Shown here: positions 9,490 through 58,638 of the stretch, piece by piece
Layout: every line of letters begins with the position of its first letter
Position numbering within the stretch: the first letter of the stretch is position 1
Origin: Antechinus flavipes
Taxonomy: Eukaryota
Length of the DNA: 64,000 nucleotides
Direction: 5' to 3'
NCBI RefSeq assembly: GCF_016432865.1
Contig: NC_067398.1
Coordinates: 78,802,001 to 78,866,000, forward strand
Made by a program: the position numbers and the translations under genes
The notes under the pieces: generated by a model
The model's database searches: none
What the model was told of the DNA's origin: nothing
Seen by the model: the letters and a program-made list of their open reading frames with translations, nothing else

Positions 9490-9745
9490 TGTAAAAGAGC
9501 AGTTATTTTTCCACTTGGCTGCAGGGGACAGACTGACAAACAAGTGGAAGTTGCAAAAAGAGAAATAAAGGCTTTAAATGAGGAAAAAACTTCCTAGAAA
9601 TTAACTACAAATGGAATGGACTTCTATGAGAAATGGTAGTTCCCTCTCAAGGAGAGCTCTGACCAAAGGCTGGATAACCAAGGCACATTATGCTGGGGAC
9701 TTTATTTTAGATAAAAACTAAATGGCACTTGGGAGTAATTTCTAA
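9490..9745 (+). mobile_element. L3/CR1 LINE 3' fragment
   Basis: gaagttgcaaaaagag...gaggaaaaaacttccta...tggaatgg...ggctggataacc matches the CR1/L3 3' end. Confidence 0.6.
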
Positions 9746-9789
9746 CTCTGATTCTTGATCCTATTGTGGAGGACTGAGCATTGTTTTGT

Positions 9790-10210
9790 TTTGTTTTGTT
9801 TTGACTTTATATTGGAGGCAACGGGAATAGGAAAAATATTGAGAAGATCCACATGGTCAGTCTATGTTTAAGGAATAGTAGCCATTTGAAGGATGGAAGA
9901 GAGTGGAAGGAAGCTTTTGTAATCATCTAAGAAAGGCTGACAATATCCTATCAGGGAAAAGTTATGGAAAACAAAAGTGGGGCAGGTGTGAGTGTTGTGG
10001 AGCTCTCAATGAGCAAAACTTAGCCACTGACTGGATAAAAGTATGAGATAAAAGGAAGAATCCAGGACCCCAAGACTGGGAGCTTGAATAACAGAAAAGA
10101 CGGTGCCTTTTAACAGAAATAGGACGGTTTGGGGGAGGAATCAACTCGGGGGAAATTAATGTCCGTGTAACATCCATTCGAAGCTAATGAATGACAACAG
10201 AATCTCAGTT
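9790..10210 (-). mobile_element. L2 LINE fragment
   Basis: Purine-rich + strand with L2 motifs (gccactgactggat..., gaatccaggacccc); accounts for spurious ORF 9962-10177. Confidence 0.55.
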
Positions 10211-10729
10211 TGGGAAGACTGGTAGCCAGGTAGGCAATCCAACCTTTACCATAAATTAATCCCACTACAAATTCCTGACATGGGTACGCAGTTCTTGCCT
10301 GAAGACCTACTCCTTAGTAAGGTAGCTCAGTCTACTTGAGAACATTCCTAATTATGAGGAAGCTTTTCCCTACCAAGCCTCATTATTCCTATGCCTGCCA
10401 AGCAGAAAAGGTGCAGTTTCCTCACGACAGCCTTTCCAATAAACAGCAGCCCGTCTCCTCCAGGTTGACCCAGAGCCATCAATGACAGTTTTGAAGCTTC
10501 CTAGTTGCCCTTATTCTAGTTCCTCTTCCTTTAACCGAGTTGTGTGGCAATAACACAAAGCCCTCAGCCGTCCTACCCCTTCCAGCAAGTATCTCGTTTG
10601 CCTTTTTTTTTAATGTGTTTACCAGAACTGAAAACCAGGCACTTATTATTTTCAATCGAATTAAATGGTGAGCTCAATGACCAATAGTGGGTCGGGACAG
10701 TCAGGAAAGGAGCCGAGATTTCTTTTTGA

Positions 10730-11350
10730 GTTCTAGATAGGGAGAAGACCGCGAGAGGCTGGGAGAAAACCGGAAAGATCGACGGTACCGTACGGCTGGA
10801 AGAGAGCGTGCCTCGAGGCCGGCGCAGCTCAGGGTCCCCAGCGGGACTGGGAGACCAGACCTCGGACTGCGCCCGGAGGAGGGAGGGAAAGAGATTTGCG
10901 CGGAGAGAAACCGGGGCGGAAGGGGCGGAGCCGAGAGAAGCCCGGGAAGGAGGGGTGGTGAGGGGCCTGGGTAGGGGCGGGCCGAAAGAAGCTCGATAGG
11001 AGGGACGGGGCCAGAGGCTCTGTGAGGGCGGAGCTTAGGAGAAGTGGCAGCTCCACCCTCCGGCCGGGGCGCGTCCCCTGATGCATCTCGTGGTCCAGCG
11101 CGCTGTGCCCTGACACTAAGCTCGGTGCTCCCAGGCCGAGGAGAGGAGGGCATGGCCCCAGAAGCTCCTGTTCCGGTAAGAGCGGCTACAGAGGCCCGGG
11201 CCAAGGGAGGCGGAGCCCTTGAGGAGCTCCCGGCCTGCGGGAGGGACAGCTCCCGGCCTTAGGGTCCGGCACTCGAGGATTCCGGATCCTGAGCTGGGAG
11301 GGATCAGAAAGAAGCTATCGAGACCTCACCCTTTGTTTTACAGGGCGGGA
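10730..11350 (+). promoter_or_regulatory. CpG-island promoter and exon 1 region of gene 2
   Basis: CpG-rich; multiple GGGGCGG boxes at ~10900-11035; gagggcATGg at 11152; donor GTAAGA at 11176; intron start homologous to genes 1 and 3 (gcctgcgggagggacagctc). Confidence 0.8.
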
Positions 11351-14300
11351 AACTGAGGCCCAGAGAGATGGGTCACTCGGCTAAGCCGGAGTGCTGACAG
11401 GGGATTTGATCCCATGCCTCCCAGACCCCAACCCAGTGCCTCCCAGTCCTAACTCCGAGTGGGCGAAGAGGGCTCGCGGTAGAGGGGACTCCGCCAGGGT
11501 CAGGGAGAGGTAGGATTCTTGTAGCCACACAGTCAGTGGGCGCGCACGCAGGCACTGTGCTGCTAAGCCTTGACATGCAAAGAAAGGCCCTCCACATAGA
11601 GGGAAGCCGCAGAAGCCACAGGGGCCATAGAGAATAGAGTGGAAAGCCCCTCCTAGGATGGAAGGCCTCGCATTTTGAGGCACCAGGAAAGCCAGTGGGA
11701 AGAGTTGTTTACTTTGGGATCCCTGAGGTCATAGAGTATAGTGTGCTTTCTAGAGCCCAAGTTGGGGTGCCAAAATGTACCCTTGGGACTAGCCCTCTCT
11801 GGAGGATCTTGGGACCAGCCTGAGCCCTTGGGCTTACAAGAGGAGTGATGGATAAGGCAGGGACCCTCCTGGATGGTCAGATATGGAGTCCATTTGTTTC
11901 AAGATCTCTCAGCCCTAAATACCTTAGTACAATTACATCACTACAACACGTGCTGACTCTAGTATGATTACATCACCACAGCACACTGCTCATGTGCTAA
12001 CTATAAGCACCTGCTATTAATATGTAAATGCCTCTTTTACTGTTGTATCTCTGCTTCAGGTAAAACACAGATTGTCACACCCTCTCCCCCACACTCCACT
12101 TGTCAGGACGGCTGAGACACCCCCTCCTCCAAGGGGAGATGAGAGCCAAACCATTTTCAGCAAGTTCCATCTGGGCTAAAGCGGCTTCTACCTCACCCAT
12201 AGTTCCCCCACTGTCTGTGGCTCTACAATAGAGAGCTTGCTGCAGCCTTTTGACCTGGGGAGTTACCAGGTTGCAAGTAACCCTCTTGGCCCCTCTTGGG
12301 AACAAGGACCAGAGAGGAGAGAGACCTTTGGCCAGCACCCACCATTGGGACACTGCCACAGAACTGGCAGGAGGTGACCAGGTGGATAGAGGAGAAAGGG
12401 GGTTACCCATGCCATCTGCTAGGAAGAGGGCATCAGGTGGCTCTGTGGCCACGCCGGGTTGAAGATACCCTTTGGGACAGGTTAGCCAGTAGGCATTGGG
12501 AGGCAGCTGAGAAGTCTGGGTTGGATAAGTAGATCTGAGAACCATCTGCATAGACATGATAGTGAAGTCTTTGGGAACTGATGGAATAGATAAAGAAATA
12601 GAAAAGAAGTTATTAGGGGGACGCCTGTAGCAACAATCCCGGAGAAAGGAGTGGTTAAGTCAGGTGGGAAGAGAAGCAGCCTGAAAACTTAGAGAGAGGA
12701 CTCAAGGAGAGGAGGATGGACAGTGTCAGAGCCACAGGGGGTCACCAATGGGGAGGAATGAGAAAAAGCCATTACATTTGAGGACTTTGGAGACTTCACT
12801 TTGAGTTGGATGATGAGGACAGAAATCAGGCACCGAATGTAGAAAGTTGTCCGCTCAAAGGAGGCAAAATACCGGACAGTAGCCAAATCCCAAAGGGGCA
12901 GTTTGCTGGAGAAGATAGGATAGAATGGGATCCAAAATGCAGGAAGAGGGGACTGCCTCTTCACAAGGAGAAAGGACATCAATACCTGGGAGAAGGAGGG
13001 GAAGGATGGGGAGGAAGGGGGAGGCATCCAAGTGAGGAAAGACAAGGAGAGGACAAGTAGAAGCTCTCAGCAAATGGTCCATATTTTTCAGCAAAATATG
13101 AAGCAAGCTTCTCAGCTGAGAGGATCCAAAGAAGAGGAGCCATGGGAATTTTGAGATAGGACTGCAGGTGAGGGCCCATAATTTTAGGGAAAGGGAGAGT
13201 TGAGACATTAGGCTTCAGGGGCAGAGACTCAGCCGCCTCGGAGTTTAGGGATTTAGAGCAGGGCTGCAGCTGGAAATTATCTCTTGGTCCACTTGCTAGA
13301 GAGGCAGGTAATTTTCCTGAGGTTCCCAGGTTATTCCCCTGCAGTTTTCCTCAACAAACCTTTCACAGAGTGCATTCTCTTTTACCATTCTCTGCCCATA
13401 TTGTTGCTACGATACACTTGGGAAGAAAAGCCTTGTAGTTTTGGAAAATGAACACTCAGAGCTTCTCTAGTTGCCTGTTATAAAAGAATTTAAAACAAAC
13501 CTGGTGGGAATCCGTTTTTAGCATCTACATTGTATGAAAGAAATGGAATAGAAAAAGATATTTTCTGAATTAGTGATGCAAAATGAAAGTATGACTCATG
13601 CTTGTGGTTCTAGGTGGCTGTGACATTTGATGATGTGACCATGTATTTCACAGAGCAGGAGTGGGAGACCTTGGAGGAGTGGCAAAAGGAGCTTTACAAG
13701 CATGTCATGAAGACCAACTATGAGACCTTGGTCTCACTGGGTAAGATGTTTTCATCGGGAACTTTGATGGTGTCTTATAGAATCAGATTCAATATCATCC
13801 AGCTCTTGTATCACAACCTGAAAGTTCTTCTAGAAACCCCATCCTGATTGGTCCTTTCCACAATTTCACTTTATTTTCAAGTTTTATTATTACTTTTGTT
13901 TTTTAACAATAGTAATTTCTCAGTATCCCTTGTAACAAAGAAAACCAGTTAAGCAAAGCAAATCAACAAACTGACCTCAAATATAGTGTAGGTAACATTC
14001 TACCTTGAGCTTCTCTTTATTTACTGAGTAGAGGGAAATGTTTTATGTCATCTGTTCTCCTATATCAAGGTTGGACATTGCAATTCATATGAATGTTAAT
14101 TTATATAATTGTCATTCTCTGTCATTTCTATAAGTTTTCCACTGTTTTCTCTGAATTCCTTCATCTTCTTTTTTTTTTAATGGAGCAGTAATATTTCATT
14201 ACTTCAGTATACCATTTGTTCACCAATCAATAGCTACCTGTCTTGTTTACAGTTTTGTGTTAACACAGATACTACAGATATTTTAGTTTATATAGCTTTT

Positions 14301-17300
14301 GTGAAAATCTCTGGACCTTAATGACTAGCTGGATAGGTAGCAATATTATTGAATTCAATAAATTTCCGAAGTACAAGATACAATGCAAAAAAGAAAGAGT
14401 AAATTTTAATAGCAACCAACATTATCTACTTGAAATTAATCATCTGGAATTGGAAAAGTTTGTTTAGTGCCCCTACTAAGGCTGTCATGCTGGTCTAACT
14501 TGGCCCCCTTGCCATTTCAGATCTCTAAAGCTTTATTTATTATACCCTATAGCATTTTTTTCCAGTGGTGTTTACTGAGCCTGGCTAATATTAATCTCTG
14601 CCATGAGATCTCAGGTACTATTATAAATCATCTCTCTCACTGCTTCTCATTTCAGAGTCCCCAAAATATCTACTATTAAAAATAGCAACTCAAATTTTTA
14701 GCTTGCCATGTATCCTACAGTTTTCCATTTTAACAGCTTTAGTGTATGATAACTCAAAAACAAATTTTTCCTAGTATGTCCAACAAGAATTTCATTATGT
14801 CTTCCTATGCAGCAGCATGGAAAAACATTAACTCCACTAGTCAATTGATTGATGAATGCTTGTTTCATGCTTACTGTGAAAGGCACTTTATTAAATTCTG
14901 TAGGGAAAACAGAAGCATAAGCTACAATATGTATTTGTCCTCATGAAGCTTATATTCTGTTTGGGGAGATCATTAACAGTATATAAACATATAAAGACAT
15001 AACAATACAAAAGATCAATAACAGTTCACTTCAGCAATAAAATACATATCAGGAGGCAGTACCTTATTAATTGTCAAATATATAAGTGCAACCAATATAC
15101 AGAAAAAGAAAAAAATAATTGTGGTCTTGAGCATGCTAGAAAGAATACACAGAGGAGGATAATTAGGTCTAAAATATATATTTATATTTGATGAGCAAAA
15201 ATCGCAAAAAATCCAAAGAGGATGTAAAATGATAGTGCCCAATAATTTGAACCAAAAGTTATTTCCTGGCAACTAAATTACTGGCTGTAAAGGAAATCAA
15301 AAAATAAAAATAATTATAATTGGTAGTATTTCATCACTGTTCACAAAAGGTGTGAAGAATTTAATGGGCAACTTAAAGCCAAATAGATTAGGCATCTCTC
15401 TAGGAACCTAATACCAAGATGCAAACAGTCATTCTGATTTTATCTCCATAAAATCTCCATTTATTATAGTGTTCACAAAACTTGTGCTTCTGGTGACCTA
15501 AAGGAAAACAAACTTATTTACCATTTTGTGACCTGTTTGTCCAGGCTATGCCATTTCCAAACCAGATTTGATAACCCAGATTGAACAAGGGGAAGAACCA
15601 TTCGTCAGAGATCAGGGACGCTTGAGTACAAGGGAACTGGCCATTGGACACAGAGGCAGCTGTTTTCTGGTGAGTGTGAAAAAGTGAAAGGAGTGAAATT
15701 CAAGAGGCCATCTTCAGGTTCTCCTCCTTCTAGGACTTAAATCTTCCTGTCATGTCCAACTACTTTGGGTTTGATTTAGGATTGGCCCTAGCTTCATCAG
15801 CTATCAGAGCTCCAGACCCCAAACAATTTCACTATCATATGTGTCATACACAAACAGTAGCTCTATCCTGTTCTTCTTCTGATCAAGAAACCCAAGATTC
15901 TGAAGTTGCTTAGAGTTTTTCCAGTTACTTAGAGTTCAGCTTATTTTTAATAATCTTTTCATTTATATTGATTGTATTTATTTGTTTAGTTCCACTGAGT
16001 TAATTCTGCATCAATAGACAAAAATCTTTTCTTTTTCCTGACTTCCTCATAATCAGCCTTTCCCAAATTTAGTATAATTCTATTACATTCATTTACCATA
16101 GGGTGGTTTTTTAGCCATTTCCCAATTGATTGGCAGCCACTTTGTTTCCAGTCTTTTGCTGCCACAAAAAGTGCTACTATAAATATTGATGTACACACAC
16201 ACACACACACACACTGTCTGTCTCTCTTCTCTCTTTCACCTTAATCTAGCATACCAAACAGAAATATCATACATCTTTCCTACATATCTATATTAAATGA
16301 CTAATATTTGATAATCATTCTTACTTTGTGAATGACACTTTAAATTCTAAAGATATATAGAAGCGCACCTCACCAGAAGTATTTATCACCATAAATTACA
16401 TTTTACTTTTCAAAGAACTTGTCTACTTAGGGATATCTAAAATGTAAACAAGCAGGACATAAATATTTGTAAATGCAAATAATAATGTACTACCTCAGTA
16501 TAAGAGAAATCAGAAGGCAATGCAATCATTTCTTCCCAAACACATATATCCAGCAATAACTGCTATAAATGTGTAGTTGATATAAAGAACACTGTTGTCC
16601 ATAGTGGATTCCAAAAAGGCTTCACAAAAGAATCAAGAAGTTTTCAAAAGCAAGATTTGAATTTAAAAGTTGCAAAATGTTTAAACAGGATGTGAAATAT
16701 AATGGCTGATAAACAGAAAATTTCTGATGACTTTCATCATAAAAATTTTGAGAAAATGTAGGTTTTTTGTGTGTAGGGGTTATTTTATTCATTGCATTTA
16801 TATTTATATACTTATCATATAGTAGGCATTTAATAACGTATTGACTATTGATTAGGATAGAAACTAGTTTTGAAGGGATTAAATTGAACCGTGGTAATCT
16901 GTGTTTATCAGATACTCTATCTCCAGTACTACATCCCAGTGTTAGAAACTTAACTCAAGGCCCAAGTAATTTTCTCCACTTGTAGTCTGTATTTTACAAC
17001 TTACATTCCTATATTGTCTAGGAATAACTTGGTGTGATAGAAACTGGGAAGAACATAGAGAATATAGAAGAACTATAGAATTGAGAGAATTAAGAAATCC
17101 AGATTCAAATGATAGCTCATATTATATACAGTATGGTTCATGAAAAAGTCAGAATCATAACATGTCTATGAACTTCAGTTTCCTTATCTTTAAAATCGGG
17201 ATAATATACTTGGACTGCCAATTTCACAAGGTTGTATTAATCAGAATGTTTTAAAAAACCTTAAAGCATCATATAATATGAATTTGAGGGAGTTGATGCA

Positions 17301-20300
17301 GTTTCTAGCTATAAACAGCACAGCCCCATCCCACTGAGTCAATGAGCAATAGAAACTGCCACCAAGAACATTATTGGGAATATTTCAGTTGAGGTCAGTT
17401 ACTTTCAAACCATAGTGATTTGCAGATTTGTTTTGTGACAGACCAGCACATCTTGAATCCCCTTGAGCCAACCTTTAGGAATTTTCGAAACAAAAGCAAT
17501 TTTAGCTGACTTTATTAAATCAATATAAACTTCACAGTCCTTTTAAAAGTGCAGGCAATGTGGGGAATCAAACAACTCGTTGGTAGCTAAGAGCCAAATG
17601 AAGGAGACAGCACTCTGCTACAGTGGGAGCACCCAAATCCTGGGTTTATATATATATACGTGTGTGTGTGTGTGTGTTCCTGTATCTTGTACCTTAATCT
17701 GAATTAAAAGAAACAAAACTGCTTCTTTGTGGCCTCTTCAGGCTGTGCCATCTCCAAGCCAGACTCAATAACCCAGATTGAACAAGAAGAAAAGCCAGTC
17801 ATCAGCCATCAGGGGAACTCGGAAACAGGAGGTTATGCAGTCTGCTTCAGTGATAATGAGCATCCTGATGTGAAGAGCATAGAAGTGCAGCCATTTGGGG
17901 GTGAGTTAGGAGGAGGGGAAAGAGTGAAACTCAAGGTGGCACATTCTGATTTTTGCTCCCTAATAAGTCTTGCTTTCTTGATGGTCTGAGCTAGAACCTG
18001 ATATCAGGGCAACACTGAGCTTCAAGAGATCTCATAAAGAAATCATTCAGGGAAGGCTACAAGGCATCTTTACTTTAATCTTTACTTATACACACAGAGA
18101 TGAGTTCTGTTCTATTTTTCCTATCATGATTGGGAAATCTGAACTCCTGAATTCCAAGAAGTAAAATGAAACTTGTCATTGGTTAAGGAGGCCAGTGTTC
18201 AGCATCGGTAGGAAAGACATTACCTCATTTTTTGCTGTTGCTTGCCAATAGATAAATAAGTCAAGGACTCTATAGGGGTTAAAATTTAAGATTTTGCCCC
18301 CTATGAAGAAGGGTTGGCTTCCCTGTTAAATCTGCAAGTTAAAGGTTTTTTTCCTATTAAGCTAATGGAATTACCATTTTTTTTAATTATCAAAAGTAAG
18401 CATACTTGAAATAAAAAATAAGATAAAAGCCCTAAGAGAAGGGTGATTGTATCCATTTCAAGACAAAAAGATTGTGCTTATTTGATTTTCTTTCCCAAGA
18501 GTAGCTTCACCACGTCCAGTAACCAAAGTTTTCTTCTGAAAACATTTGTTCCAACATGAGTAAGAATAAAGAAAGAACAATCTTGACCTTGTCCTGGAGC
18601 CCAGTTTCAAATCTGGGCAGGTAGGAAGAAGGCAGAGAGTTAATTCTTCCTGATCTTTTTCTTCTTATGACTATTAGAGAGACTGTACAGATTTGTAGAA
18701 AGAGAAGTGTTCCTCAGAGTGCCTCTCCACCTTTTCCTTTTATCAGCTGTGTGATTATGGGCAACTTATATCTCTCTAAACTTCAATTTCTCATCTATAA
18801 ATAAGAATCACATTTAGGTTCTATACAAAATATTCTATTACAGTACCTCATTAATCACTCTGAACATCAAATAAGGTAATATACGTAACATGCACTACAT
18901 ATGTTATTACATGTCTGTTATTACAAAATATGTGGCAGGAACTTTATAGCACTATATCAACATGAAACAAGCCTATTGCTCATAAACATTCTCCATGTCT
19001 TCATGTCTTTCTTCAGGGAGAGAAATCTTTGGATTCACAAGTTTGAGGCTTAATGTTACAAGAGGTGTCAAAGCGTTATGTCTTTTGGGTCATGGCTCAC
19101 CTGGTTTATGTGCATCCAATTTAAATCTTCTCTAAACAGTGTGATTATATTTGGTTATATTAATGAAGAAGTGAATTTAAGGAAGGAATGGGAATTAAAT
19201 TTGAGAAAGACAGGCAGGGAATTTCAGTACTGGCCAAGTCAGGTAAAGACATGGAAAGATAAATTCAAGAAACATTTTAAATGTCTTACATTTATATAGA
19301 GCTTTATATCCACAAAAGACTATGCAGCATATCATTTGGTTCACACAACAACCCTGATCTTAATCCAGCTGAGGTTTAGAGTAGTCACACTCTACTGGAA
19401 TTCAAATCCAGTCATTAAATACCAGTTTCAGTGCACTTTCTAATACTCCATGTTATGCAGAGACCTGAATCAGTGCTAGGAGAGAGGAAAATATCAATAA
19501 ACCATGATGCTAAGACTGTTCCTGGATCTAACTCTGACCATCTCTCCTTAGCCCTTAGCCTCCTAAATCAATTATTTTCTCTCATCACAAGCTCCATTCC
19601 CCTCTCCATTCTCAAGACTATTACTCCTTTTCTGATGTCACATTCGTCCCTCACTGAAGCAAGGAAATCCATCCAAAGGCTTTCCCTCTTCTACTCCAAA
19701 CTTCCTGTTCATTTCCAAATTCTCCCATACTCCCATCTCACCCAAGTACCTTGCCTCTCATTGTACTGAAAAAATTAAGGCCACAATCTCCTCCTCTTTT
19801 TTTTCTCTCTAGCCCCTTGACAATATTCCCTATTCTCTTTTTCTTAATTCTACTTTTTTGATACTGAGGTGACCTTTATTCCTTCCCCTCCTATCTTTTC
19901 CATCAGACTACCCCTGCTCTCATCTGTTTTCACACTTTCTAAACTTACACTTTGTCGCTATCTATTGTTTCTTCCCCTAGTGCCTCCAAACATATCCAAC
20001 TCTCTTCAGTCATCAAAAAAATCCTCATAGAACCTTACGGTTTCCTCCTAGATATCTCCTTTTCCCCCAACCTCCTAGGAAAAAATTATCCCCACTTGTT
20101 ACCTCTTCTTTCTTCACCCTCACTCATTCCTCATCCCTTTGCAATTGGGCTTCTCGCTCCCTTCTAAGGAAACTGCCCTTTTTAAAATTTCTAATGATCT
20201 AATATCCAATTCAGGTCCTTTTTTTTTCAGTCCTCTTCTGCTGTGTGACTCTGTAGTCTTTGACACTGCTGACCACTCTCTCTCTTCTTTGGGCTTTTGT

Positions 20301-23300
20301 GACACTACCTCTCCTACTTCTACCTACTTATCCTCCACAATATATCCCAAGACTTTTACTCCAGACCATCTTCTCTCCACATTTTGTCTCTATCACATGG
20401 ATTTAATTATCCTTCTGCAGATGTCTCCAAGATCTGGCTCCCCAGCTCTAGTGTCTTTCCTGAGTTTTCCAAAATGCCCACTGAACACTTTAGACTGGAT
20501 TTTCATGGACATCTCAAGCCCCAAATGTCCAAAACAGAAGGCATTATCTTCCTTCCCACCTCCCTTCTTGCAGACTTGCCTTTCTTTGCTAAGGATGCCA
20601 CCATTCCTGGATCTCGTCAGTGTTATCCTCAAAGTCTTAGTCTCCCTCACCCATTTACCAATAACTTGTCTCCCTGCCTCAAGACCATGCCAGCTGCAGC
20701 CCAGCCCCCAGATACCACTGCCAAAAGAGCATTTCAGGAGCTCGGAAGTAAACTGTCTCTGGGTTTAAGGCTCTTCGTAGCCTGGCCCGAACCTCTCCTT
20801 CCAAATTCCTTATGCCTTCCTTCTCTTCCCTCTCACCAAAGTGACCTCCTCCATGTCCCTCCTCTAAGCCTTTGCCTTAGCTGCTCTCAATCCCTGAAAT
20901 ACTCTCATTTCTAGCCTCACCTCTGCTTTCTAGGATCCCTCATTTCTTTCAGAACTCCAGCTCCTAGTGCCCTCCCTCCCTATCTTTGTTTTTACTTTCC
21001 TTGTATTATTAGATGTTTATTCTAAATCTCTTAAATATGTATTTGTCTTTCCCCACAGAATTTAAGGCCCTTACATTAGGAACATTTTTTCTTTGTTTCC
21101 CCTGAGGCTGGCACATATAGGTACTTAGTGCTTGTTGCTTATGTGATTGATAGTAGTAGTTTCATAGATTTCAAGTTGCATGAGACCTGAGATCATAAAA
21201 TCAGCCCTGTTGTTTTACAGATAAGGCAAAGCAATCTCATTCAGAAGTAAATGCCAATTGATCCATGAACCCATGGTCACACAGGGAGTAAACATCAGAG
21301 CCAAGATTTAAACCTGGTTGCTGAGTCCCAAGTCCCTTGGCAAAGTCTCTTGGACCTTCTTGTAGAGCAGCCATGAGTTGCTGATCAGGTCTTTGTTTTT
21401 CATTCCAGGGGATTCTGGATCTTCAAGACAAGAAGAGAGCCACAGACATGATCTTCAAAACCAGAACTGGGCTGGGTCCTTGCCATTCCACTGCAGTGTG
21501 TGCAGCAAGGGCTTCACTCACAAGTCTCAACTAGCCAATCACGTTAGAATTCACAGGCCAAAAAAACACTTCCAGTGCACCAAGTACGAAAAGAATTTTG
21601 CCCAAAAGACCCAACTGCTCCGGCACCAGCACCTGCAAACGGGGGAGAGGCCCTTCCAGTGCTCTGAGTGTGACAAGAGCTTCCCAGCAAAGGGGGACAT
21701 GAAGCAGCCTGAAAACTTAGAGAGAGGACTCAAGGAGAAGAGGAGGATGGACAGGAGGTCATCAACGGTGAGGAATGAGAAAAAGCCATTACATTTGAGG
21801 ACTTTGGAGACTTCATTTTGAGTTGGATGATGAGGACAGAAATCAGGCACCGAATGTAGAAAGTTGTCCACTCAAAGGAGGCAAAATACAGGACAGTAGC
21901 CAAATCCCAAAGGGGCAGTTTGCTGGAGAAGATAGGATAGAATGGGATCCAAAATGCAGGAAGAGGGGACTGCCTCTTCACAAGGAGAAAGGACATCAAT
22001 ACCTGGGAGAAAGAGGGGAAGGAGGGGAAGGAAAGAGGGGAGGCATCCAAGTGAGGAGAGACAAGGAGAGGATAAGTAGAAGCTCTCAGCAAATGGTCCA
22101 TATTTTTCAGCAAAATATGAAGCAAGCTTCTCAGCTAAGAGGAGCCATGGGAATTTTGAGATAGGACTGCAGGTGAGGGCCCATAATTTTAGGGAAAGGG
22201 AGAGTTGAGACATTAGGCTTCAGGGGCAGAGACTCAGCCGCCTCGGAGTTTAGGGATTTAGAGCAGAGCTGCAGCTGGAAATTATCTCTTGGTCCACTTG
22301 CTAGAGAGGCAGGTAATTTTCCTGAGGTTCCCAGGTTATTCCCCTGCAGTTTTCCTCAACAAACCTTTCACAGAGTGCATTCTCTTTTACCATTCTCTGC
22401 CCATATTGTTGCTACCACACACTTGGGAAGAAAAGCCTTGTAGTCTTGGAAAATGAACACTCAGAGCTTCTCTAGTTGCCTGTAATAAAAGAATTTAAAA
22501 CAAACCTGGTGGGAATCCGTTTTTAGCATCTACATTGTATGAAAGAAATGGAATAGAAAAAGATATTTTCTGAATTAGTGATGCAAAATGAAAGTATGAC
22601 TCATGCTTGTGGTTCCAGGTGGCTGTGACATTTGATGATGTGACCATGTATTTCACAGAGCAGGAGTGGGAGACCTTGGAGGAGTGGCAAAAGGAGCTTT
22701 ACAAGCATGTCATGAAGACCAACTATGAGACCTTGGTCTCACTGGGTAAGATGTTTTCATCGGGAACTTTGATGGTGTCTTATAGAATCAGATTCAATAT
22801 CATCCAGCTCTTGTATCACAACCTGAAAGTTCTTCTAGAAACCCCATCCTGATTGGTCCTTTCCACAATTTCACTTTATTTTCAAGTTTTATTATTACTT
22901 TTGTTTTTTAACAATAGTAATTTCTCAGTATCCCTTGTAACAAAGAAAACCAGTTAAGCAAAGCAAATCAACAAACTGACCTCAAATATAGTGTAGGTAA
23001 CATTCTACCTTGAGCTTCTCTTTATTTACTGAGTAGAGGGAAATGTTTTATGTCATCTGTTCTCCTATATCAAGGTTGGACATTGCAATTCATATGAATG
23101 TTAATTTATGTAATTGTCATTCTCTGTCATTTCTATAAGTTTTCCACTGTTTTCTCTGAATTCCTTCATCTTCTATTTTTTTTAATGGAACAGTAATATT
23201 TCATTACTTCAGTATACCATTTGTTCACCAATCAGTAGCTACCTGTCTTGTTTACAGTTTTGTGTTAACACAGATACTACAGATATTTTAGTTTATATAG

Positions 23301-25185
23301 CTTTTGTGAAAATCTCTGGACCTTAATGACTAGCTGGATAGGTAGCAATATTATTGAATTCAATAAATTTCCGAAGTACAAGATACAATGCAAAAAAGAA
23401 AGAGTAAATTTTAATAGCAACCAACATTATTTACTTGAAATTAATCATCTGGAATTGGAAAAGTGTTTAGTGCACCTACTAAGGCTGTCATGCTGGTCTA
23501 ACTTGGCCCCCTTGCCATTTCAGATCTCTAAAGCTTTATTTATTATACCCTATAGCATTTTTTTCCAGTGGTGTTTACTGAGCCTGGCTAATATTAATCT
23601 CTGCCATGAGATCTCAGGTACTATTACAAATCATCTCTCTCACTGCTTCTCATTTCAGAGTCCCCAAAATATCTACTATTAAAAATAGCAACTCAAATTT
23701 TTAGCTTGCCATGTATCCTACAGTTTTCCATTTTAACAGCTTTAGTGTATGATAACTCAAAAACAAATTTTTCCTAGTATGTCCAACAAGAATTTCATTA
23801 TGTCTTCCTATGCAGCAGCATGGAAAAACATTAACTCCACTAGTCAATTGATTGATGAATGCTTGTTTCATGCTTACTGGGAAAGGCACTTTATTAAATT
23901 CTGTAGGGAAAACAGAAGCATAAGCTACAATATATATTTGTCCTCATGGACCTTATATTCTGTTTGGGGAGATCATTAACAGTATATAAACATATAAAGA
24001 CATAACAATACAAAAGATCAATAACAGTTCACTTCAGCAATAAAATACATGTCAGGAGGCAGTACCTTATTAATTGTCAAAAAATCCAAAGAGGATATAA
24101 AATGATAGTGACCAATAATTTGAACCAAAAGTTATTTCCTGGCAACTAAGTTACTGGCTGTGAAGGAAATCAAAAAATAAAAATAATTATAATTGGTAGT
24201 ATTTCATCACTGTTCACAAAAGGTGTGAAGAATTTAATGGGCAACTTAAAGCCAAATAGGTTAGGCATCTCTCTAGGAACCTAATGCCAAGATGCAGACA
24301 GTCATTCTGTTTTATATTTCCATAAAATCTCCATTTATTATAGTCTTCTCAAAACTTGTGCTTCTGGTGACCTAAAGGAAAACAAACTTATTTGCCATTT
24401 TGTGACCTGTTTGTCCAGGCTATGCCATTTCCAAACCAGATTTGATAACCCAGATTGAACAAGGGGAAGAACCATTCGTCAGAGATCAGGGACGCTTGAG
24501 TACAAGGGAACTGGCCATTGGTTCCAGGGCTGATGACCCTTGTGGCTTGAAGAGGACACAGAGGCAGCTGTTTTCTGGTGAGTGTGAAAAAGTGAAAGGA
24601 GTGAAACTCAAGAGGCCATCTTCAGGTTCTCCTCCTTCTAGACTTAAATCTTCCTGTCATGTCCAACTGCTTTGGGTTTGATTTTAGGGCTGGTCCTAGC
24701 TTCAAGAGATCAACTACCAGAACTCCAGACCCCAAACAATTTCACTATCATATGTGTCATACACAAACAGGAGCTCTATCCTGTTCTTCTTCTGATCAAG
24801 AAACCCAAGATTCTGAAGTTGGAGAAAGAAAAGCAAACCTAAATATGACAGTCAAATGTTAGCCTCATGAGGGTAGGTTCTATCATGTACTGTTAACTTC
24901 ATTATTGATTTTCCAGTTACTTAGAGTTCAGCTTATTTTTAAAAATCTTTCCATTCATATTGTGTATGTTTATTCTTTTAGTTCCACCTATTTTAATTCT
25001 GCATCAATAGACAAAAATCTTTTCTTTTTGCTGACTTCCTCATAATCAGCTTTTCCCAAATTCAGTATAATTCTATTACATTCATTTACTATAGGGTGGT
25101 TTTTTAGCCATTTCTCAATTGATTGGCAGCCACTTTGTTTCCATTCTTTTGCTACCACAAAAAAATGCTACTATAAATATTGATG

Positions 25186-25222
<37 letters not shown>

Positions 25223-25228
25223 TCTCTC

Positions 25229-25262
<34 letters not shown>

Positions 25263-28200
25263 ACCTTTAACTAGTATACCAAACAGGAATATCATACATC
25301 TTTTCTGCCTATCTATATCAAATGACTAATATTTGATAATCATTCCTACTTTGTGAACGACACTTTAAATTCTAAAGCTATATAAGTGTGTACATCGCCA
25401 GAAGAATTTATCACCATTATTACATTGTATTTTTCAAAGAACTTGTCTACTTAGGGATACCTAAAATGTAAACAAGCAAGACATAAATATTTGTAAATGC
25501 AAATAATAATGCACTACCTCAGTATAAGAGAAATCAGAAGGCCATGCAATCATTTCTTGCCAAACACATATATCCAGCAATAATTGCTATAAATGTGCAG
25601 TTGATATAAAGAACACTGTTGTCCATAGTGGATTCCAAAAAGGCTTCACAAAAGAATCAGGAAGTTTTTAAAAGCAAGATTTTACTTTAATAGTTGCAAA
25701 AAGTTCCAACAGGATATGAAATAAATAATACCTGATAAAAGCCAGAAAATTTCTGATGACCTTCATCATAATAGTTTTGAGAAAATGTAGGTTTTTTGTG
25801 TGTAGGGATTTTTTTATTCATTGCATTTGTATCTATATATCTATCATATAGTAGGCATTTAATAACTTATTATTAATTAGGATAGAAACTAGATTTGAAG
25901 GCATTAAATTGAACCAGGACAATCTCTGCTTATCAGATTCCCCATCTCCAGTACTACCTCCCAGTGTTGGAAGCTTAACTCAAGGCCCAAGTAATTTTTT
26001 CAACCTATAGTCTATACTTTACAACTTACACTCATATACTGTCTAGGAACAATTTAGTTTGATAGAAACTGGGAAGAACATAGCCTAGAAAGAATTAGGA
26101 AACCCAGATTTAACTGATAGCTCAAATTATATGTAGTATGGACCATGAACAAGTCACAATTACATCATGTCTATGAGCCTCAGTTTCCTGTCTTTAAAAT
26201 GGGGAGGGGCAGCTAGGTGGAGCAATGGATAAAGCAGCAGCCCTGAAGTCAGAAGGACCTGAGTTCAAATCTGGTCCCAGACACTTAACACTTCCTGTCT
26301 GTATAACCCTGAGCAAGTCACTTAACCCCAATTGCCTCAGCAAATAAATAAATAAATAAATGAAATAGGGATGATATACTTGGACTGTCAATTTCACAAG
26401 GTTGTATTAATCAGAATGTTTTAAAAATCTTAAAGCATCATATAATATGAATTTGAGGGAGTTGATGCAGTTTCTAGTTCTAAACAGCACAGCCCCATCC
26501 CACTGAGTCAATGAGCAATAGAAACTGCCACCAAGAACATTATTGGGAATATTTCAGTTGAGGTCAGTTACTTTCAAACCATAGTGATTTGCAGATTTGT
26601 TTTGTGACAGACCAGCACATCTTGAATCCCCTTGAGCCAACCTTTAGGAATTTTCGGAACAAAAGCAATTTTAGCTGACTTTATTAAATCAACATAAACT
26701 TCACAGTCCTTTTTTTTTTTCCAAGTCCTGCACTTTTGTGCAGGCAGTGTGGGAAATCAAACAACTCGTTGGTAGCTAAGAGCCAAATGAAGGAGACAGC
26801 ACTCTGCTTCAGTGGGAGCCCCCAAATCCTAGGTTTATGTATATACATGTGTGTGTGTGTGTGTGTTCCTGTATCTTGTACCTTAATCTGAATTAAAAGA
26901 AACAAAACTGCTTCTTTGTGGCCTCTTCAGGCTGTGCCATCTCCAAGCCAGACTCAATAACCCAGATTGAACAAGGAGAAAAGCCAGTCATCAGCCATCA
27001 GGGGAACTCAGAAACAGGAGGTTATGCAGTCTGCTTCAGTGATAATGAGCATCTTGATGTGAAGAGCATAGAAGTGCAGCCATTTGGGGGTGAGTTAGGA
27101 GGAGGGGAAAGAGTGAAACTCAAGGTGGCACATTCTGATTTTTGCTCCCTAATAAGTCTTGCTTTCTTGATAGTCTGAGCTAGAACCTGATATCAGGGCA
27201 ACACTGAGCTTCAAGAGATCTCATAAAGAAATCATTCAGGGAAGGCTACAAGGCATCTTTACTTTAATCTTTACTTAAACACACAGAGATGAGTTCTGTT
27301 CTATTTTTCCTATCATGATTGGGAAATCTGAACTCCTGAATTCCAAGAAGTAAAATGAAACTTGTCATTGGTTGAGGAAGCCAGTGTTCAGCATCGGTAG
27401 GAAAGACATTACCTCATTTTTTGCTGTTGCTTGCCAATAGATAAATAAGTCAAGGACTCTATAGGGGTTAAAATTTAAGATTTTGCCCCCTATGAAGAAG
27501 GGTTGGCTTCCCTGTTAAATCTGCAAATTAGGAAAAAGGCAAAGGTTTTTTTCCTATTAAGCTAATGGAATTACCATTTTTTTAATTATCAAAAGTAAGC
27601 ATATTTGAAATAAAAAATAAGATAAAAGCCCTAAGAGAAGGGTGATTGTATCCATTTCAGGACAAAAAGATTGTGCTTATCTGATTTTCTTTCCCAAAAG
27701 TAAGTTCACCATGTCCAGTAACCAAAGTTTTTTCCTGAAAACATATGTTCCAACATGAGTGCCCATGGCCACATAGGGAGTAAGCATCAGAGCCAAGACT
27801 TAAACCTAGTAACTGGTCCAAAGGTCCTCAAAGTCTCTTGAACCTTCTCTCAGGCAGCCATGAGTTGCTGACCAGGTCTTTGTTTTTCATTCCAGGGGAT
27901 TCTGAATCTTCAAGACAAGAGGAGAGCCACAGACATGATCTTCAAAACCAGAACTGGGCTGGGCCCTTGCCATTCCACTGCAGTGTGTGCAGCAAGGGCT
28001 TCACCCACAAGTCTCAACTAGCCAATCACATTAGAGTTCACAGGCCAAAAAAACACTTCCAGTGCACTGAATGTGAAAAGAACTTTGCCCAAAAGTCCCG
28101 ACTGCTCCGACACCAGCGCCTGCACACGGGGGAGAGGCCCTTCCAGTGCCCTGAGTGTGACAAGAGCTTCCACCAGAAGGGCCATCTGCTCAAGCACCTG

Positions 28201-28605
28201 CCCCTGCACACAGGGGAGAGACCCTTCCAATGCCCCGAGTGTGACAAGAGCTTCCGAGCAAAGGGGGACCTGAAGGCCCACCAGCGCCGGCACAGGGAGG
28301 AGAAGCCATTCTCCTGCAGCGAGTGTGGGAAGGGCTTCACCACGCATCATTACCTCACTGATCACATCAGAATACACACCGGGGAGAAGCCCTTCCACTG
28401 CCCCGAGTGTGGCAAGAGCTTCCGCATGAAAGCGGACATGAGAGTCCACCAGCGCAGACACAGCAAGGCCAGGTCGTTCTGCTGCAGCGAGTGCGAGAAG
28501 GCCTTCCCCAAGCAGTCTGAACTCACAGACCACAGCAAGGTGCACACCAAGAAACAGCACTACAAGGGCCTGCTCTGTGGACTGATGGACCTGGACTGGG
28601 GCTGA
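11152..28605 (+). CDS. KRAB-C2H2 zinc-finger gene 2 (ZNF786-like) with internally duplicated KRAB modules; simplest intact product 392 aa, 7 fingers
   Basis: Exon 1 11152-11175 (MAPEAPVP) joined to 22619-22745 (KRAB-A), 24419-24577 (KRAB-B a), 26931-27089 (KRAB-B b) and 27896-28605 (7 C2H2, ends [10 protein letters not shown]) gives 1179 nt in frame. This is the only promoter/exon 1 found upstream of either module. Which exons are actually used is not known. Confidence 0.75.
12570..13215 (-). mobile_element. L2 LINE RT-region fragment in intron 1 of gene 2 (duplicated at ~21705-22215)
   Basis: Minus-strand remnants of the L2 'HSTETALxKV...NG.FS' region; + strand gaggaatgagaaaaagccattacatttg. 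Confidence 0.65.
15950..16190 (-). mobile_element. L1 ORF2 C-terminus/3' fragment (duplicated at ~24950-25190)
   Basis: Minus-strand translation [25 protein letters not shown] resembles the L1 ORF2 C-terminus. Confidence 0.75.
19431..20920 (+). mobile_element. L2 LINE ORF2 (RT) remnant
   Basis: Translation [13 protein letters not shown]...VFDTADHSL resembles the L2 RT motif STETALxKVTNDL...AFDTVDH; pyrimidine-rich sense strand. Confidence 0.8.
22619..28605 (+). CDS. Second, intact KRAB-A + 2x KRAB-B + 7-finger module of gene 2 (no promoter or exon 1 of its own)
   Basis: Exons 22619-22745, 24419-24577, 26931-27089, 27896-28605; canonical AG/GT, correct phases, no stops. Confidence 0.88.
26206..26362 (+). 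mobile_element. WSINE1-type tRNA SINE, present only in duplicate copy 2
   Basis: GGGGCAGCTAGGTGG...ccccaattgcctcagc plus (AAAT)n tail; imperfect TSD aaatgggga/aaataggga; empty site at ~17195 in copy 1. Confidence 0.88.
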
Positions 28606-35004: not shown

Positions 35005-35132
35005 NNNNNNNNNNNNNNNNNNNNNNNNNNNNNNNNNNNNNNNNNNNNNNNNNNNNNNNNNNNNNNNNNNNNNNNNNNNNNNNNNNNNNNNNNNNNNNNN
35101 NNNNNNNNNNNNNNNNNNNNNNNNNNNNNNNN
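35005..35132. other. Assembly gap (128 N)
   Basis: Run of N; true size unknown. Confidence 1.
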
Positions 35133-58433: not shown

Positions 58434-58638
58434 TAACAATTGTCAATTAATAAGAAATTAACAAAAGATTGCTTCCCTATTGTCAGGACCCAGTTGCAGT
58501 TAGTATAAATTCTTAGTAGATCCATCAGCAGCCTTTTATAAGAAATATTCAGGGCCAGGACCAGAAGACACACTACTGCTTGGAATTGAAGCTGATCACA
58601 CTTCTCATGGGCAAGCTGGTCTTTTTCATTCAGTATGA
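58434..58638 (+). repeat. 205-bp direct repeat, copy 1 (copy 2 at 60794-60998)
   Basis: Same length, about 16 substitutions (mostly transitions), no indels by manual alignment. Confidence 0.92.

What the first reader, a model, noticed from the sequence alone, without database searches (positions are those of the whole stretch)
12673..28275. Intragenic tandem duplication with a 4-bp microhomology junction: two gene bodies behind one promoter
Seen: copy 1 (12673-21704) and copy 2 (21701-28275) join at GAAG shared between finger 4 and intronic L2. Only one CpG promoter and exon 1 exists, so the intact downstream module can be expressed only by splicing across about 11 kb containing a rival set of exons. 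All four KRAB-B-type exons have phase-1 acceptors and three are symmetric 159-nt phase 1-1 cassettes, so many in-frame combinations exist (e.g. first KRAB-A joined to the downstream fingers). Knowledge: short microhomology junctions are typical of MMEJ/MMBIR. Inference: a combinatorial cassette locus rather than a gene plus a pseudogene.
Basis: partly seen in the sequence, partly recalled or inferred. Interest (0 to 1): 0.8.

Follow-up and report, generated by a model that had tools for sequence, protein, structure and literature searches.

The report
Old tandem duplication inside KRAB zinc-finger gene
A zinc-finger repressor gene of the yellow-footed antechinus carries a real partial copy of itself between its promoter and its intact body; the copy is over 20 million years old, is shared with the dunnart and the Tasmanian devil, and is decaying rather than serving as a proven exon-shuffling device.

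Summary
Copy 1 (12673-21704) and copy 2 (21701-28275) are head-to-tail repeats, 95.7% identical over 6,135 aligned bases. They join at GAAG, which finger 4 and an intron-1 repeat share.

The window is Antechinus flavipes chromosome CM028217.1. Independent assemblies of Sminthopsis and Sarcophilus carry the same junction and the same copy-specific indels. Dromiciops has a single copy. The duplication therefore predates crown Dasyuridae (about 21-29 Ma) and is not a misassembly.

"Two bodies behind one promoter" is supported:
- Copy 2 has no CpG island.
- The truncated finger exon has a GT donor 67 nt past the junction and is in frame with the second KRAB-A exon.
- The Sminthopsis RefSeq model threads all nine exons into one 822-aa protein with two KRAB boxes.
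- The Antechinus RefSeq protein starts at an ATG straddling the junction.

"Combinatorial cassette locus" is not supported:
- Copy 1 has frame-breaking lesions in Antechinus (34 bp) and Sarcophilus (three 1-bp deletions).
- Its fingers evolve about five times faster at protein level.
- The two KRAB-B exons are constitutive in single-copy orthologues.
- No isoform data for this species could be read.

Gene conversion homogenises the exon-bearing segments.

The parts
10750..11500 (.). The only CpG island of the gene (putative promoter)
   Evidence: GC is 0.62-0.70 and CpG observed/expected 0.55-1.0 here, and 0.3 or less elsewhere in 9000-14000. No island lies in 21200-22800.
11152..11175 (+). 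Exon 1 coding part (ATG + 7 codons, MAPEAPVP), phase-0 donor GTAAGA
   Evidence: Sequence. The orthologous exon is used in the Sminthopsis RefSeq model (MAPVAPVS|VAVTF).
12673..21704 (+). Copy 1 of the tandem duplication (intron-1 repeat to truncated finger exon)
13614..13740 (+). KRAB-A exon of copy 1 (127 nt, phase 0 to 1), identical to the copy-2 exon
   Evidence: KRAB PF01352 hits on the models.
15545..15669 (+). KRAB-B1 exon of copy 1, 125 nt because of a 34-bp deletion; shifts the frame if followed by B2
   Evidence: The exon is intact (159 nt) in both copies of Sminthopsis and Sarcophilus.
17742..17900 (+). KRAB-B2 exon of copy 1 (159 nt, phase 1-1); differs from copy 2 at 3 sites, 2 of them amino-acid changes where copy 2 matches the outgroup residue
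   Evidence: outgroup proteins.
18562..21268 (+). Ancestral intron block kept in copy 1 and deleted from copy 2
   Evidence: Gap in the alignment. Parts of it (20280-20589, 20955-21306) match the Dromiciops intron upstream of the finger exon. The same block is copy-1-only in Sminthopsis and Sarcophilus.
21409..21767 (+). Z1x: the truncated finger exon turned internal exon (359 nt, phase 1 to 0). It holds fingers 1-2, a finger 3/4 hybrid, the junction and 63 nt of former intron, and is followed by the donor GTGAGG
   Evidence: The ORF is open across the junction. The donor is used by RefSeq XP_051840530.1, which I reproduced exactly. The orthologous exon is used in the Sminthopsis model. Only finger 1 still scores as zf-C2H2.
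21699..21701 (+). ATG straddling the junction; annotated start codon of the Antechinus RefSeq protein
   Evidence: It is not conserved: CTG in Sarcophilus and deleted in Sminthopsis.
21701..21704 (.). GAAG junction microhomology
   Evidence: The parental sites are 12673-12676 and 28272-28275. Dromiciops finger 4 also has ATGAAGG.
21701..28275 (+). Copy 2 of the tandem duplication
22619..22745 (+). KRAB-A exon of copy 2
   Evidence: An RNA contig of X1 joins 22744 to 24418 with GT..AG.
24419..24577 (+). KRAB-B1 exon of copy 2 (159 nt)
   Evidence: An RNA contig of X1 covers the whole exon and joins 24576 to 26930.
26196..26360 (.). High-copy SINE-like insertion present only in copy 2
   Evidence: Gap in copy 1. 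Word depth is 5x10^4 to 6x10^5 in all four runs. There are many copies in Dromiciops. The Sminthopsis and Sarcophilus copy-2 alignments run uninterrupted across it, which I read as its presence there.
26931..27089 (+). KRAB-B2 exon of copy 2 (159 nt)
27896..28605 (+). Intact terminal exon of copy 2: spacer, seven C2H2 fingers, conserved ..LMDLDWG tail, stop at 28603-28605
   Evidence: dN/dS is 0.06-0.17 between species.

Best explanation
A ZNF425/ZNF786-like KRAB zinc-finger gene suffered one microhomology-mediated (GAAG) head-to-tail duplication. It ran from a repeat in intron 1 to finger 4 of the terminal exon, and it happened before the living dasyurids diverged.

The transcription unit now reads: promoter and exon 1; KRAB-A, B1 and B2; the truncated finger exon; then a second KRAB-A, B1 and B2; then the intact seven-finger exon.

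The truncated finger exon is followed, 67 nt past the junction, by a GT donor, and it ends in phase 0. It can therefore serve as an internal exon that splices in frame to the second KRAB-A exon. I infer that the default transcript threads both bodies in series rather than choosing among cassettes.

The 5' body is under relaxed constraint and is decaying lineage by lineage. Gene conversion from the selected 3' body keeps its KRAB-exon regions looking young.

In Sminthopsis the serial ORF is still intact (822 aa, KRAB-2.5 fingers-KRAB-7 fingers). In Antechinus a 34-bp deletion in the first B1 exon breaks it. The only intact product is then the copy-2 body. It would be translated from the junction ATG behind a 101-codon upstream ORF (the 407-aa RefSeq protein), or it would be produced by transcripts that skip copy-1 exons.

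Shown: the duplication, its junction, its age, the gene conversion, the lesions, the frame compatibility and the gene models. Inferred: which transcripts are actually made in Antechinus.
For: Structure and junction.

Identity of the window: L001 matches it at every base outside the masked N run.

Age and single origin:
- Sminthopsis and Sarcophilus share the junction, the missing finger 3, the 2.7-kb loss in copy 2 and the copy-2 SINE.
- Dromiciops is single-copy.
- Crown Dasyuridae is dated 20.6-28.6 Ma (PMC5715987).
- R55Q is shared by all three Z1 exons.

Serial reading:
- Z1x is 359 nt, phase 1 to 0.
- The donor GT is present in copy 2 of all three genera, and absent in Antechinus copy 1, Sarcophilus copy 1 and the Dromiciops repeat.
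- P0001 is reproduced exactly from 21699-21767 + A2 + B1 + B2 + Z2.
- P0121 is reproduced from nine AG/GT-bounded exons.
- An all-exon Antechinus mRNA gives a 101-aa uORF plus exactly the annotated 407-aa ORF.

Decay of copy 1:
- 34-bp deletion in Antechinus B1_1.
- 1-bp deletion in Sarcophilus A1, and two 1-bp deletions plus a stop in Sarcophilus Z1x.
- Zinc ligands lost: C46Y and H63Q in Antechinus, C71Y in Sminthopsis.
- 21 nonsynonymous to 12 synonymous events in Z1, against 4 to 8 in Z2.
- No protein of 83-264 aa matching copy 1 turned up in the protein search.

Gene conversion:
- Exon-bearing segments cluster by species with 97-100% bootstrap.
- The mid-intron clusters by copy for Antechinus and Sarcophilus with 96-99%.

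RNA: a contig of run X1 carrying Sarcophilus-type letters joins A to B1 (159 nt) to B2 with GT..AG.
Against: - No Antechinus flavipes RNA was examined. The one RNA run with signal is from a Sarcophilus-like animal, and it does not show what lies upstream of the KRAB-A exon.
- Gene models are predictions. Their UTRs were not visible, so the Antechinus model could equally start at a local TSS.
- Z1 is not fully neutral: omega is about 0.43, and the binomial P against neutrality is 0.02.
- All three indels in Z1x of Antechinus and Sminthopsis are multiples of 3. This could mean that Z1x was, or still is, translated under some constraint.
- The Sarcophilus model (P0126) joins copy-1 B2 directly to the copy-2 finger exon, a cross-copy path that is not serial.
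- The three 1-bp deletions in Sarcophilus lie in short homopolymer runs and could be assembly errors.
Confidence: 0.6

Rival explanations
1. Combinatorial cassette locus. Regulated alternative splicing across the two exon sets yields several functional proteins from one promoter, for example first KRAB-A joined to downstream exons, or a double-KRAB form through the shortened B1.
For: - The phase arithmetic allows it. e1-A1-B1_1(125 nt)-A2-... gives a 476-aa ORF, and skipping B1_1 gives a 607-aa ORF.
- All copy-1 splice sites are intact.
- The gene models of three species use three different exon paths.
- In the X1 RNA contig the B1 part has the number of differences expected of Sarcophilus copy 1 (6, not 7), while the B2 part carries a copy-2-specific letter at 27039.
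Against: - Copy-1 exons carry frame-breaking lesions in two of three genera, and their fingers are degenerating.
- B1 and B2 are constitutive in single-copy orthologues.
- The X1 hint rests on single-nucleotide discriminators in bubble-popped contigs from a different individual.
- No isoform census exists.
Confidence: 0.15
2. Gene plus separate pseudogene. Copy 2 has acquired its own transcription start in or near the truncated finger exon, and copy 1 is a dead 5' fragment transcribed, if at all, on its own.
For: - The Antechinus RefSeq CDS begins at 21699, and no CDS is called in the 10 kb upstream.
- No stop lies upstream in frame within Z1, so a transcript starting inside Z1 would give the same annotation.
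Against: - There is no CpG island, and no above-neutral conservation, between the junction and the second KRAB-A exon (CpG o/e 0.22 or less; between-species distances 0.086-0.10, as for neutral intron).
- The Sminthopsis model joins both bodies.
- The all-exon mRNA also reproduces the annotated ORF exactly.
- The junction ATG is not conserved.
Confidence: 0.15
3. The double-body protein (KRAB-fingers-KRAB-fingers) is the selected product in dasyurids generally. Antechinus would keep it by skipping the damaged B1 exon.
For: - An intact 822-aa ORF in Sminthopsis with two KRAB boxes and nine fingers.
- Z1x stays open and in frame in Antechinus and Sminthopsis despite three indels, all multiples of 3.
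- Z1 omega of about 0.43 is below 1.
- The skip-B1 ORF of 607 aa is open.
Against: - In Sarcophilus the serial ORF is broken at three places.
- Zinc ligands are lost in Antechinus finger 2 and Sminthopsis finger 3.
- Intactness of the KRAB exons of copy 1 is explained by gene conversion.
- The annotation of Antechinus does not use this ORF.
Confidence: 0.09
4. Assembly artefact: a falsely duplicated segment.
For: None beyond the general possibility. The X19 contig has 30, not 31, letters to the right of the junction.
Against: - The copies differ by 4.3% plus 15 indels of 5 bp or more.
- The same junction and copy-specific indels occur in two other genera's assemblies.
- X19 holds the junction words without a mismatch.
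Confidence: 0.01

Closest known systems
KRAB zinc-finger genes of the ZNF282/ZNF777 family cluster (human 7q36.1: ZNF425, ZNF786, ZNF398, ZNF212, ZNF746, ...)
   Same: - NCBI names the product 'zinc finger protein 425-like' and relatives 'ZNF786'.
- It is a tandem cluster of four paralogues in the window, each with a KRAB-A exon, KRAB-B exon(s) and one terminal finger exon.
- Liu et al. 2014 (PMC3971581) describe this cluster as ancient and conserved to opossum.
   Different: - No HUB/DUF3669 domain was found in the models at E of 0.01 or less.
- The arrays are short (7 fingers).
- This gene has two KRAB-B-type exons in all marsupial orthologues seen.
- Orthology to a particular human gene was not tested.
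Microhomology-mediated tandem duplications (MMEJ / MMBIR / FoSTeS-type junctions)
   Same: - Head-to-tail orientation.
- A 4-bp microhomology.
- No extended homology between the two breakpoints (a finger and an interspersed repeat).
- No filler bases.
   Different: The event is at least 20 My old, so the mechanism cannot be told apart from other non-homologous joining. The missing 84-bp finger next to the junction may be a second template switch or a later slippage.
Concerted evolution of tandem paralogues by gene conversion
   Same: Copies cluster by species in the exon-bearing segments and by copy in a mid-intron segment. Identity is patchy, from 87% to 99.7%.
   Different: Here donor and acceptor lie inside one transcription unit. 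Conversion keeps a decaying copy's KRAB exons intact and so masks its pseudogene status.
KZFPs with two KRAB domains (e.g. human ZNF274; double KRAB pseudogene pairs at 8q24.3)
   Same: The Sminthopsis model has two KRAB boxes. The literature records proteins or loci with two KRAB domains (titles and passages).
   Different: Here the second KRAB follows 2.5 fingers (KRAB-ZF-KRAB-ZF). It arose from duplicating most of the gene body, and it is intact in only one of three genera examined. Details of ZNF274 are from my own knowledge and were not checked here.
Exonisation of a truncated terminal exon (new internal exon from a former 3' exon plus intron sequence)
   Same: A former terminal-exon acceptor is paired with a downstream GT in former intron. 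The exon is frame-preserving, and gene models in two species use it.
   Different: The donor motif may already have existed in the ancestral intron repeat, because Sminthopsis copy 1 also has it. No read-level evidence of its use was obtained.

Membership tests
KRAB zinc-finger protein gene | KRAB box (Pfam PF01352) N-terminal to the fingers | tested here: met
   P0001 scores 69.9 bits against a cut-off of 20.4, with one KRAB. P0121 scores 131.5 bits with two KRAB stretches.
KRAB zinc-finger protein gene | Tandem C2H2 fingers with TGE(K/R)P linkers in one terminal exon | tested here: met
   Seven fingers in register of 84 nt at 27973-28560. zf-C2H2 matches 7 stretches.
KRAB zinc-finger protein gene | Canonical exon plan: 127-nt KRAB-A exon (phase 0 to 1), phase 1-1 KRAB-B exon, phase-1 finger exon | tested here: met
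ZNF282/ZNF777-type 7q36.1 subfamily (HUB + KRAB) | HUB (DUF3669) domain upstream of KRAB | tested here: not met
   No such family appears among the Pfam hits of P0001 or P0121 at E of 0.01 or less. Membership rests only on source names and best hits.
ZNF282/ZNF777-type 7q36.1 subfamily (HUB + KRAB) | Orthology or synteny with the human 7q36.1 cluster | not tested
   No flanking non-ZNF genes were examined.
Microhomology-mediated tandem duplication | Direct head-to-tail copies with 2-20 bp shared at the junction and no long homology between the breakpoints | tested here: met
   GAAG is shared and the bases on both sides switch parent. The parental sites are conserved in Sminthopsis, Sarcophilus and Dromiciops finger 4.
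Microhomology-mediated tandem duplication | Replicative (MMBIR/FoSTeS) versus end-joining origin | not testable with these tools
   This was a single ancient event. The adjacent 84-bp loss is compatible with either.
Concerted evolution by gene conversion | Paralogues within a species closer than orthologues between species in some tracts, and the reverse in others | tested here: met
   Distances and trees: S2, S4 and S6 cluster by species at 97-100%; S5 clusters by copy at 96-99% for Antechinus and Sarcophilus.
Alternative-exon cassette array (regulated combinatorial splicing) | Every alternative exon kept intact by selection | tested here: not met
   34-bp deletion in Antechinus B1_1. 1-bp deletions in Sarcophilus A1 and Z1x. 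Ligand losses in Z1.
Alternative-exon cassette array (regulated combinatorial splicing) | Several exon combinations observed in mature RNA | tested here: inconclusive
   Only one spliced contig was seen (A-B1-B2), from a Sarcophilus-like RNA run. No Antechinus RNA run was offered.
Partial duplicate pseudogene (decaying copy) | Loss of reading frame and relaxed constraint relative to the sister copy | tested here: met
   Met in Antechinus and Sarcophilus. Not met for the frame in Sminthopsis, where the 822-aa ORF is intact. Z1 omega is about 0.43 against about 0.12 for Z2.

The most novel reading that the evidence does not exclude
Dasyurid marsupials make, from one promoter, a 'tandem-body' repressor (KRAB - 2.5 fingers - KRAB - 7 fingers). 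It was created by exonising a truncated terminal exon at a duplication junction. In lineages where the serial frame has broken, cross-copy splicing (A1 to B1_2, B1_1 to A2, B2_1 to Z2) supplies several in-frame proteins. On this reading the locus really works as a small combinatorial exon array, kept usable by gene conversion.
Probability: 0.15. Interest if true: 0.6.

Novelty: new member of a known kind. Interest (0 to 1): 0.38.

Why it matters
This is a clean, datable natural example of what happens when most of a gene is duplicated inside itself.
- The junction is preserved to the base in three genera.
- A former terminal exon gains an internal-exon role.
- Gene conversion keeps the redundant KRAB exons pristine while the unconverted finger exon decays.
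- Three lineages have reached three different states: an intact double ORF, a 34-bp frameshift, and multiple 1-bp frameshifts.

It warns annotators that the Antechinus start codon is an accident of the junction. It also offers Sminthopsis, a laboratory marsupial, as a place to test whether a KRAB-ZF-KRAB-ZF protein is made. The finding does not change how KZFP genes are understood.

Tried and rejected
1. I first read the 2.7-kb copy-1-only block as an insertion near the Z1 acceptor. Homology to the Dromiciops intron shows it is ancestral sequence deleted from copy 2.
2. I first placed the end of homology at 28191 with an 'AAGCA' microhomology, from a local alignment. Finger-by-finger comparison shows that copy 1 lacks finger 3 and that the true partner is finger 4, with GAAG.
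3. I thought the donor at 21768 was created de novo in copy 2. Sminthopsis copy 1 also has GT there, so it may predate the duplication or have spread by conversion.
4. A search for an annotated product of copy 1 (151-aa Z1 ORF, 83-264 aa window) found only a wombat paralogue.
5. Run X9 (labelled RNA?) gave no exon coverage and was uninformative. The X1 contig ending at 21684 runs on into letters (GTCAGAAGAGGAG) found nowhere in the window, so it is probably a conserved finger piece of another gene.
6. Wombat DNA could not be fetched (file too large), and the wallaby protein is not on record by position.
7. The finger-exon tree is unresolved: bootstrap 28-67%, with long copy-1 branches.
8. The bacterial promoter/terminator scan and the phage, plasmid and E. 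coli collections were not used because they do not apply to a marsupial gene.
9. The L2 identity of the breakpoint repeat could not be tested, as no repeat library is available.


Full report
**What is there.** A self-comparison of the window finds a strong direct repeat. 12673-15078 matches 21701-24081 at 97.5%, and further colinear blocks run to 21694 / 28181. A global alignment gives 6,135 ungapped columns with 265 mismatches (95.7%) and 15 gaps of 5 bp or more. The window holds four paralogous KRAB zinc-finger genes. Their finger exons lie near 6.6, 28, 46 and 57 kb, and CpG-rich starts lie near 0.5, 11, 36.5 and 50 kb. The duplication lies inside the second gene.

**The junction.** Finger-by-finger comparison shows three things:
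- Copy 1's finger exon contains finger 1, finger 2 and a hybrid of fingers 3 and 4. One 84-nt unit is missing.
- The last copy-1 bases match finger 4 of copy 2 up to ..CTGAAG (28275).
- The next bases match the intron-1 site from GAAGCAGCC (12673).

My own estimate is that a random junction shows 4 bp or more of microhomology about 1-2% of the time. The intron-side breakpoint sits inside an interspersed repeat, since a Dromiciops element spans it. Whether that repeat is L2 could not be tested.

**Gene anatomy.**

| Element | Coordinates | Notes |
|---|---|---|
| CpG island | 10750-11500 | the only one in the gene |
| Exon 1 | 11152-11175 | ATG plus 7 codons, GTAAGA donor |
| Copy 1 KRAB-A | 13614-13740 | 127 nt |
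| Copy 1 B1 | 15545-15669 | 125 nt, 34-bp deletion |
| Copy 1 B2 | 17742-17900 | 159 nt |
| Copy 1 finger-exon acceptor | 21409 | |
| Copy 2 KRAB-A | 22619-22745 | |
| Copy 2 B1 | 24419-24577 | 159 nt |
| Copy 2 B2 | 26931-27089 | 159 nt |
| Copy 2 finger exon | 27896-28605 | seven intact fingers and a conserved tail |

All acceptors and donors are canonical in both copies. The two KRAB-A exons are identical. The B1 exons differ only by the deletion. The B2 exons differ at three sites. No CpG island lies between the junction and the second KRAB-A exon.

**Whose genome, and what the annotators made of it.** A protein search with the copy-2 finger ORF returned XP_051840530.1, 'zinc finger protein 425-like' of Antechinus flavipes. 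Its locus (L001) matches the window at every base outside the masked N run, which I did not read. The window is therefore A. flavipes chromosome CM028217.1.

The 407-aa protein begins [10 protein letters not shown].., which is the reading frame of the truncated finger exon running across the junction. I reproduced the protein exactly from 21699-21767 plus the four copy-2 exons. Three points follow:
- The annotated start codon straddles the junction (AT from finger 4, G from GAAG).
- A GT donor at 21768 is used.
- The stretch 21409-21767 (359 nt, phase 1 to 0) is a frame-preserving internal exon candidate that splices in frame to the second KRAB-A exon.

An mRNA containing every exon gives a 101-codon upstream ORF, which stops in B2 of copy 1 because of the 34-bp deletion. 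It also gives exactly the annotated 407-aa ORF. Skipping the damaged B1 gives a 607-aa open frame.

**Other dasyurids.** The 90% cluster of that protein also holds XP_074138805.1 of Sminthopsis crassicaudata, 822 aa. From its conserved MAPVAPVS start it is the concatenation of nine AG/GT-bounded exons: e1, A1, B1, B2, the truncated finger exon with the junction, A2, B1, B2 and the seven-finger exon. It has two KRAB boxes and nine recognisable fingers.

The Sminthopsis locus (L002) and the Sarcophilus locus (L003) both show the same features:
- the tandem duplication;
- the same junction context (Sminthopsis has since lost 15 nt there, in frame);
- the same missing finger 3;
- the same 2.7-kb block present only in copy 1.

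The copy-2 SINE also appears to be shared, because the alignments to both loci run uninterrupted across it. Dromiciops (L004) has one copy, and its intron upstream of the finger exon matches parts of the 2.7-kb block. That block is therefore ancestral and was deleted from copy 2. Wombat, Dromiciops and wallaby proteins are single-body and include both B1 and B2, so the two KRAB-B exons are an older, constitutive exon duplication. The large duplication therefore arose after the split from those lineages and before crown Dasyuridae, dated 20.6-28.6 Ma by Kealy and Beck (PMC5715987). Three independent assemblies with one architecture exclude misassembly. In addition, a contig of run X19 covers 21551-21730 without a mismatch.

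**Concerted evolution.** Identity between the copies ranges from 99.7% around KRAB-A to 87% in the intron between B1 and B2. Across species:
- Segments bearing KRAB-A, B1 and B2 cluster by species (bootstrap 97-100%).
- The mid-intron segment clusters by copy for Antechinus and Sarcophilus (96-99%).

Gene conversion has therefore repeatedly homogenised the exon-bearing tracts in each lineage. The intactness of copy-1 KRAB exons is thus not independent evidence of function.

**Is copy 1 functional?**

Evidence of decay:
- Antechinus B1_1 has lost 34 bp.
- Sarcophilus A1 has a 1-bp deletion. Its truncated finger exon has two 1-bp deletions and meets a stop just after the junction.
- Antechinus finger 2 has lost a Cys and a His, and Sminthopsis finger 3 has lost a Cys.
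- Only finger 1 of the Antechinus copy still scores as C2H2.
- Over 78 alignable codons the copy-1 finger lineages show 21 nonsynonymous and 12 synonymous events, against 4 and 8 for copy 2. Pairwise dN/dS is 0.24-0.52 for copy 1 against 0.06-0.17 for copy 2.
- Both amino-acid differences in B2 are derived in copy 1.

Evidence of residual constraint:
- Copy-1 omega (about 0.43) is below 1 (crude binomial P = 0.02).
- The three indels in the junction exon of Antechinus and Sminthopsis are all multiples of three.
- The donor GT is kept in copy 2 of all three genera but lost from copy 1 in two.

My reading is that the serial, double-body transcript is the default output of this architecture and may have encoded a double-KRAB protein for a time; in Sminthopsis it perhaps still does. 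The 5' body is now relaxed and breaking down lineage by lineage.

**RNA.** The run search offered no A. flavipes RNA run. In run X1, a metatranscriptome, the laid contigs carry Sarcophilus-type letters. One 348-nt contig joins the end of a KRAB-A exon to a full 159-nt B1 and a full B2 with GT..AG. This confirms those exon borders and shows that both B exons are included together. Its B1 part has six differences from the Antechinus reference, the number expected for Sarcophilus copy 1 (copy 2 expects seven). Its B2 part has a copy-2-specific letter at 27039. This could be a cross-copy splice, but it rests on single nucleotides in an assembler's contig from another individual, so I do not count it. 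The Sarcophilus gene model P0126 uses A1, B1 and copy-1 B2 and then the copy-2 finger exon. The three species' models therefore take three different exon paths.

**Comparison with known things.** The gene is a KRAB zinc-finger gene by every feature tested. Sources name it ZNF425-like or ZNF786-like, which are members of the ancient 7q36.1 family described by Liu et al. (PMC3971581). The HUB/DUF3669 domain of that family was not detected, and orthology was not tested. The event matches microhomology-mediated tandem duplication. The aftermath matches concerted evolution of tandem paralogues and exonisation of a truncated exon. Loci and proteins with two KRAB domains are on record, but a KRAB-ZF-KRAB-ZF arrangement made by duplicating most of a gene body is unusual. 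I found no paper on this locus in three targeted searches.

**Verdict.** One promoter feeding two bodies and a microhomology junction are supported. The 'combinatorial cassette' reading is unsupported and is contradicted by the decay of copy 1. This is a new, well-preserved example of known processes, of moderate interest.

Noticed in passing
window 15545-15669 / 17742-17900 and 24419-24577 / 26931-27089; P0002, P0003, P0128, P0132: The gene has two KRAB-B-type 159-nt exons in tandem (B1, B2). Both are included in wallaby, wombat and Dromiciops proteins, whereas the three paralogues in the window show one B exon each. This is an older exon duplication nested inside the later large duplication.
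   Followed up: partly
L003:5485-5650 and L003:14571-14737: Both Sarcophilus KRAB-A exons carry a G>A change that makes an in-frame ATG as the third codon (VAMTF). This could give the copy-2 body its own start codon in a species where the serial frame is broken.
   Followed up: no
window 26196-26360: A SINE-like element present only in copy 2. Its word depth is 5x10^4 to 6x10^5 in all four runs, and there are many copies in the Dromiciops locus. Gene conversion has neither removed it from copy 2 nor copied it into copy 1, so it marks a limit of the conversion tracts.
   Followed up: partly
L004:6408-6858 and L004:10641-11087: Dromiciops has two 95%-identical copies of a ~450-bp element within this gene. 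One is homologous to the repeat that holds the dasyurid breakpoint. That is too similar for an old L2 fragment unless it was locally duplicated.
   Followed up: no
window 21684 (run X1): An RNA contig laid up to 21684 runs on into GTCAGAAGAGGAG, which occurs nowhere in the window. It is probably a conserved finger-start piece of another zinc-finger gene of the devil-like sample.
   Followed up: partly
window 35005-35132: A run of 128 N (masked or a gap), left untouched. It accounts for the only 128 mismatches between the window and L001.
   Followed up: no
window 19000-21000: A strongly C- and T-rich stretch (GC skew -0.27 to -0.46) inside the copy-1-only ancestral intron block. Its nature was not determined.
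   Followed up: no
window 58433-58638 and 60793-60998; 60666-60794 and 63583-63709: Further short repeats (89-92% identical, one pair inverted) downstream of the fourth gene. They are related to the copy-2 SINE at 26206-26343.
   Followed up: no
L002:6001-7772: The Sminthopsis RefSeq CDS is extended 164 residues upstream of the conserved MAPVAPVS start, through the CpG-rich 5' region. This is probably an annotation artefact of an open upstream frame.
   Followed up: no
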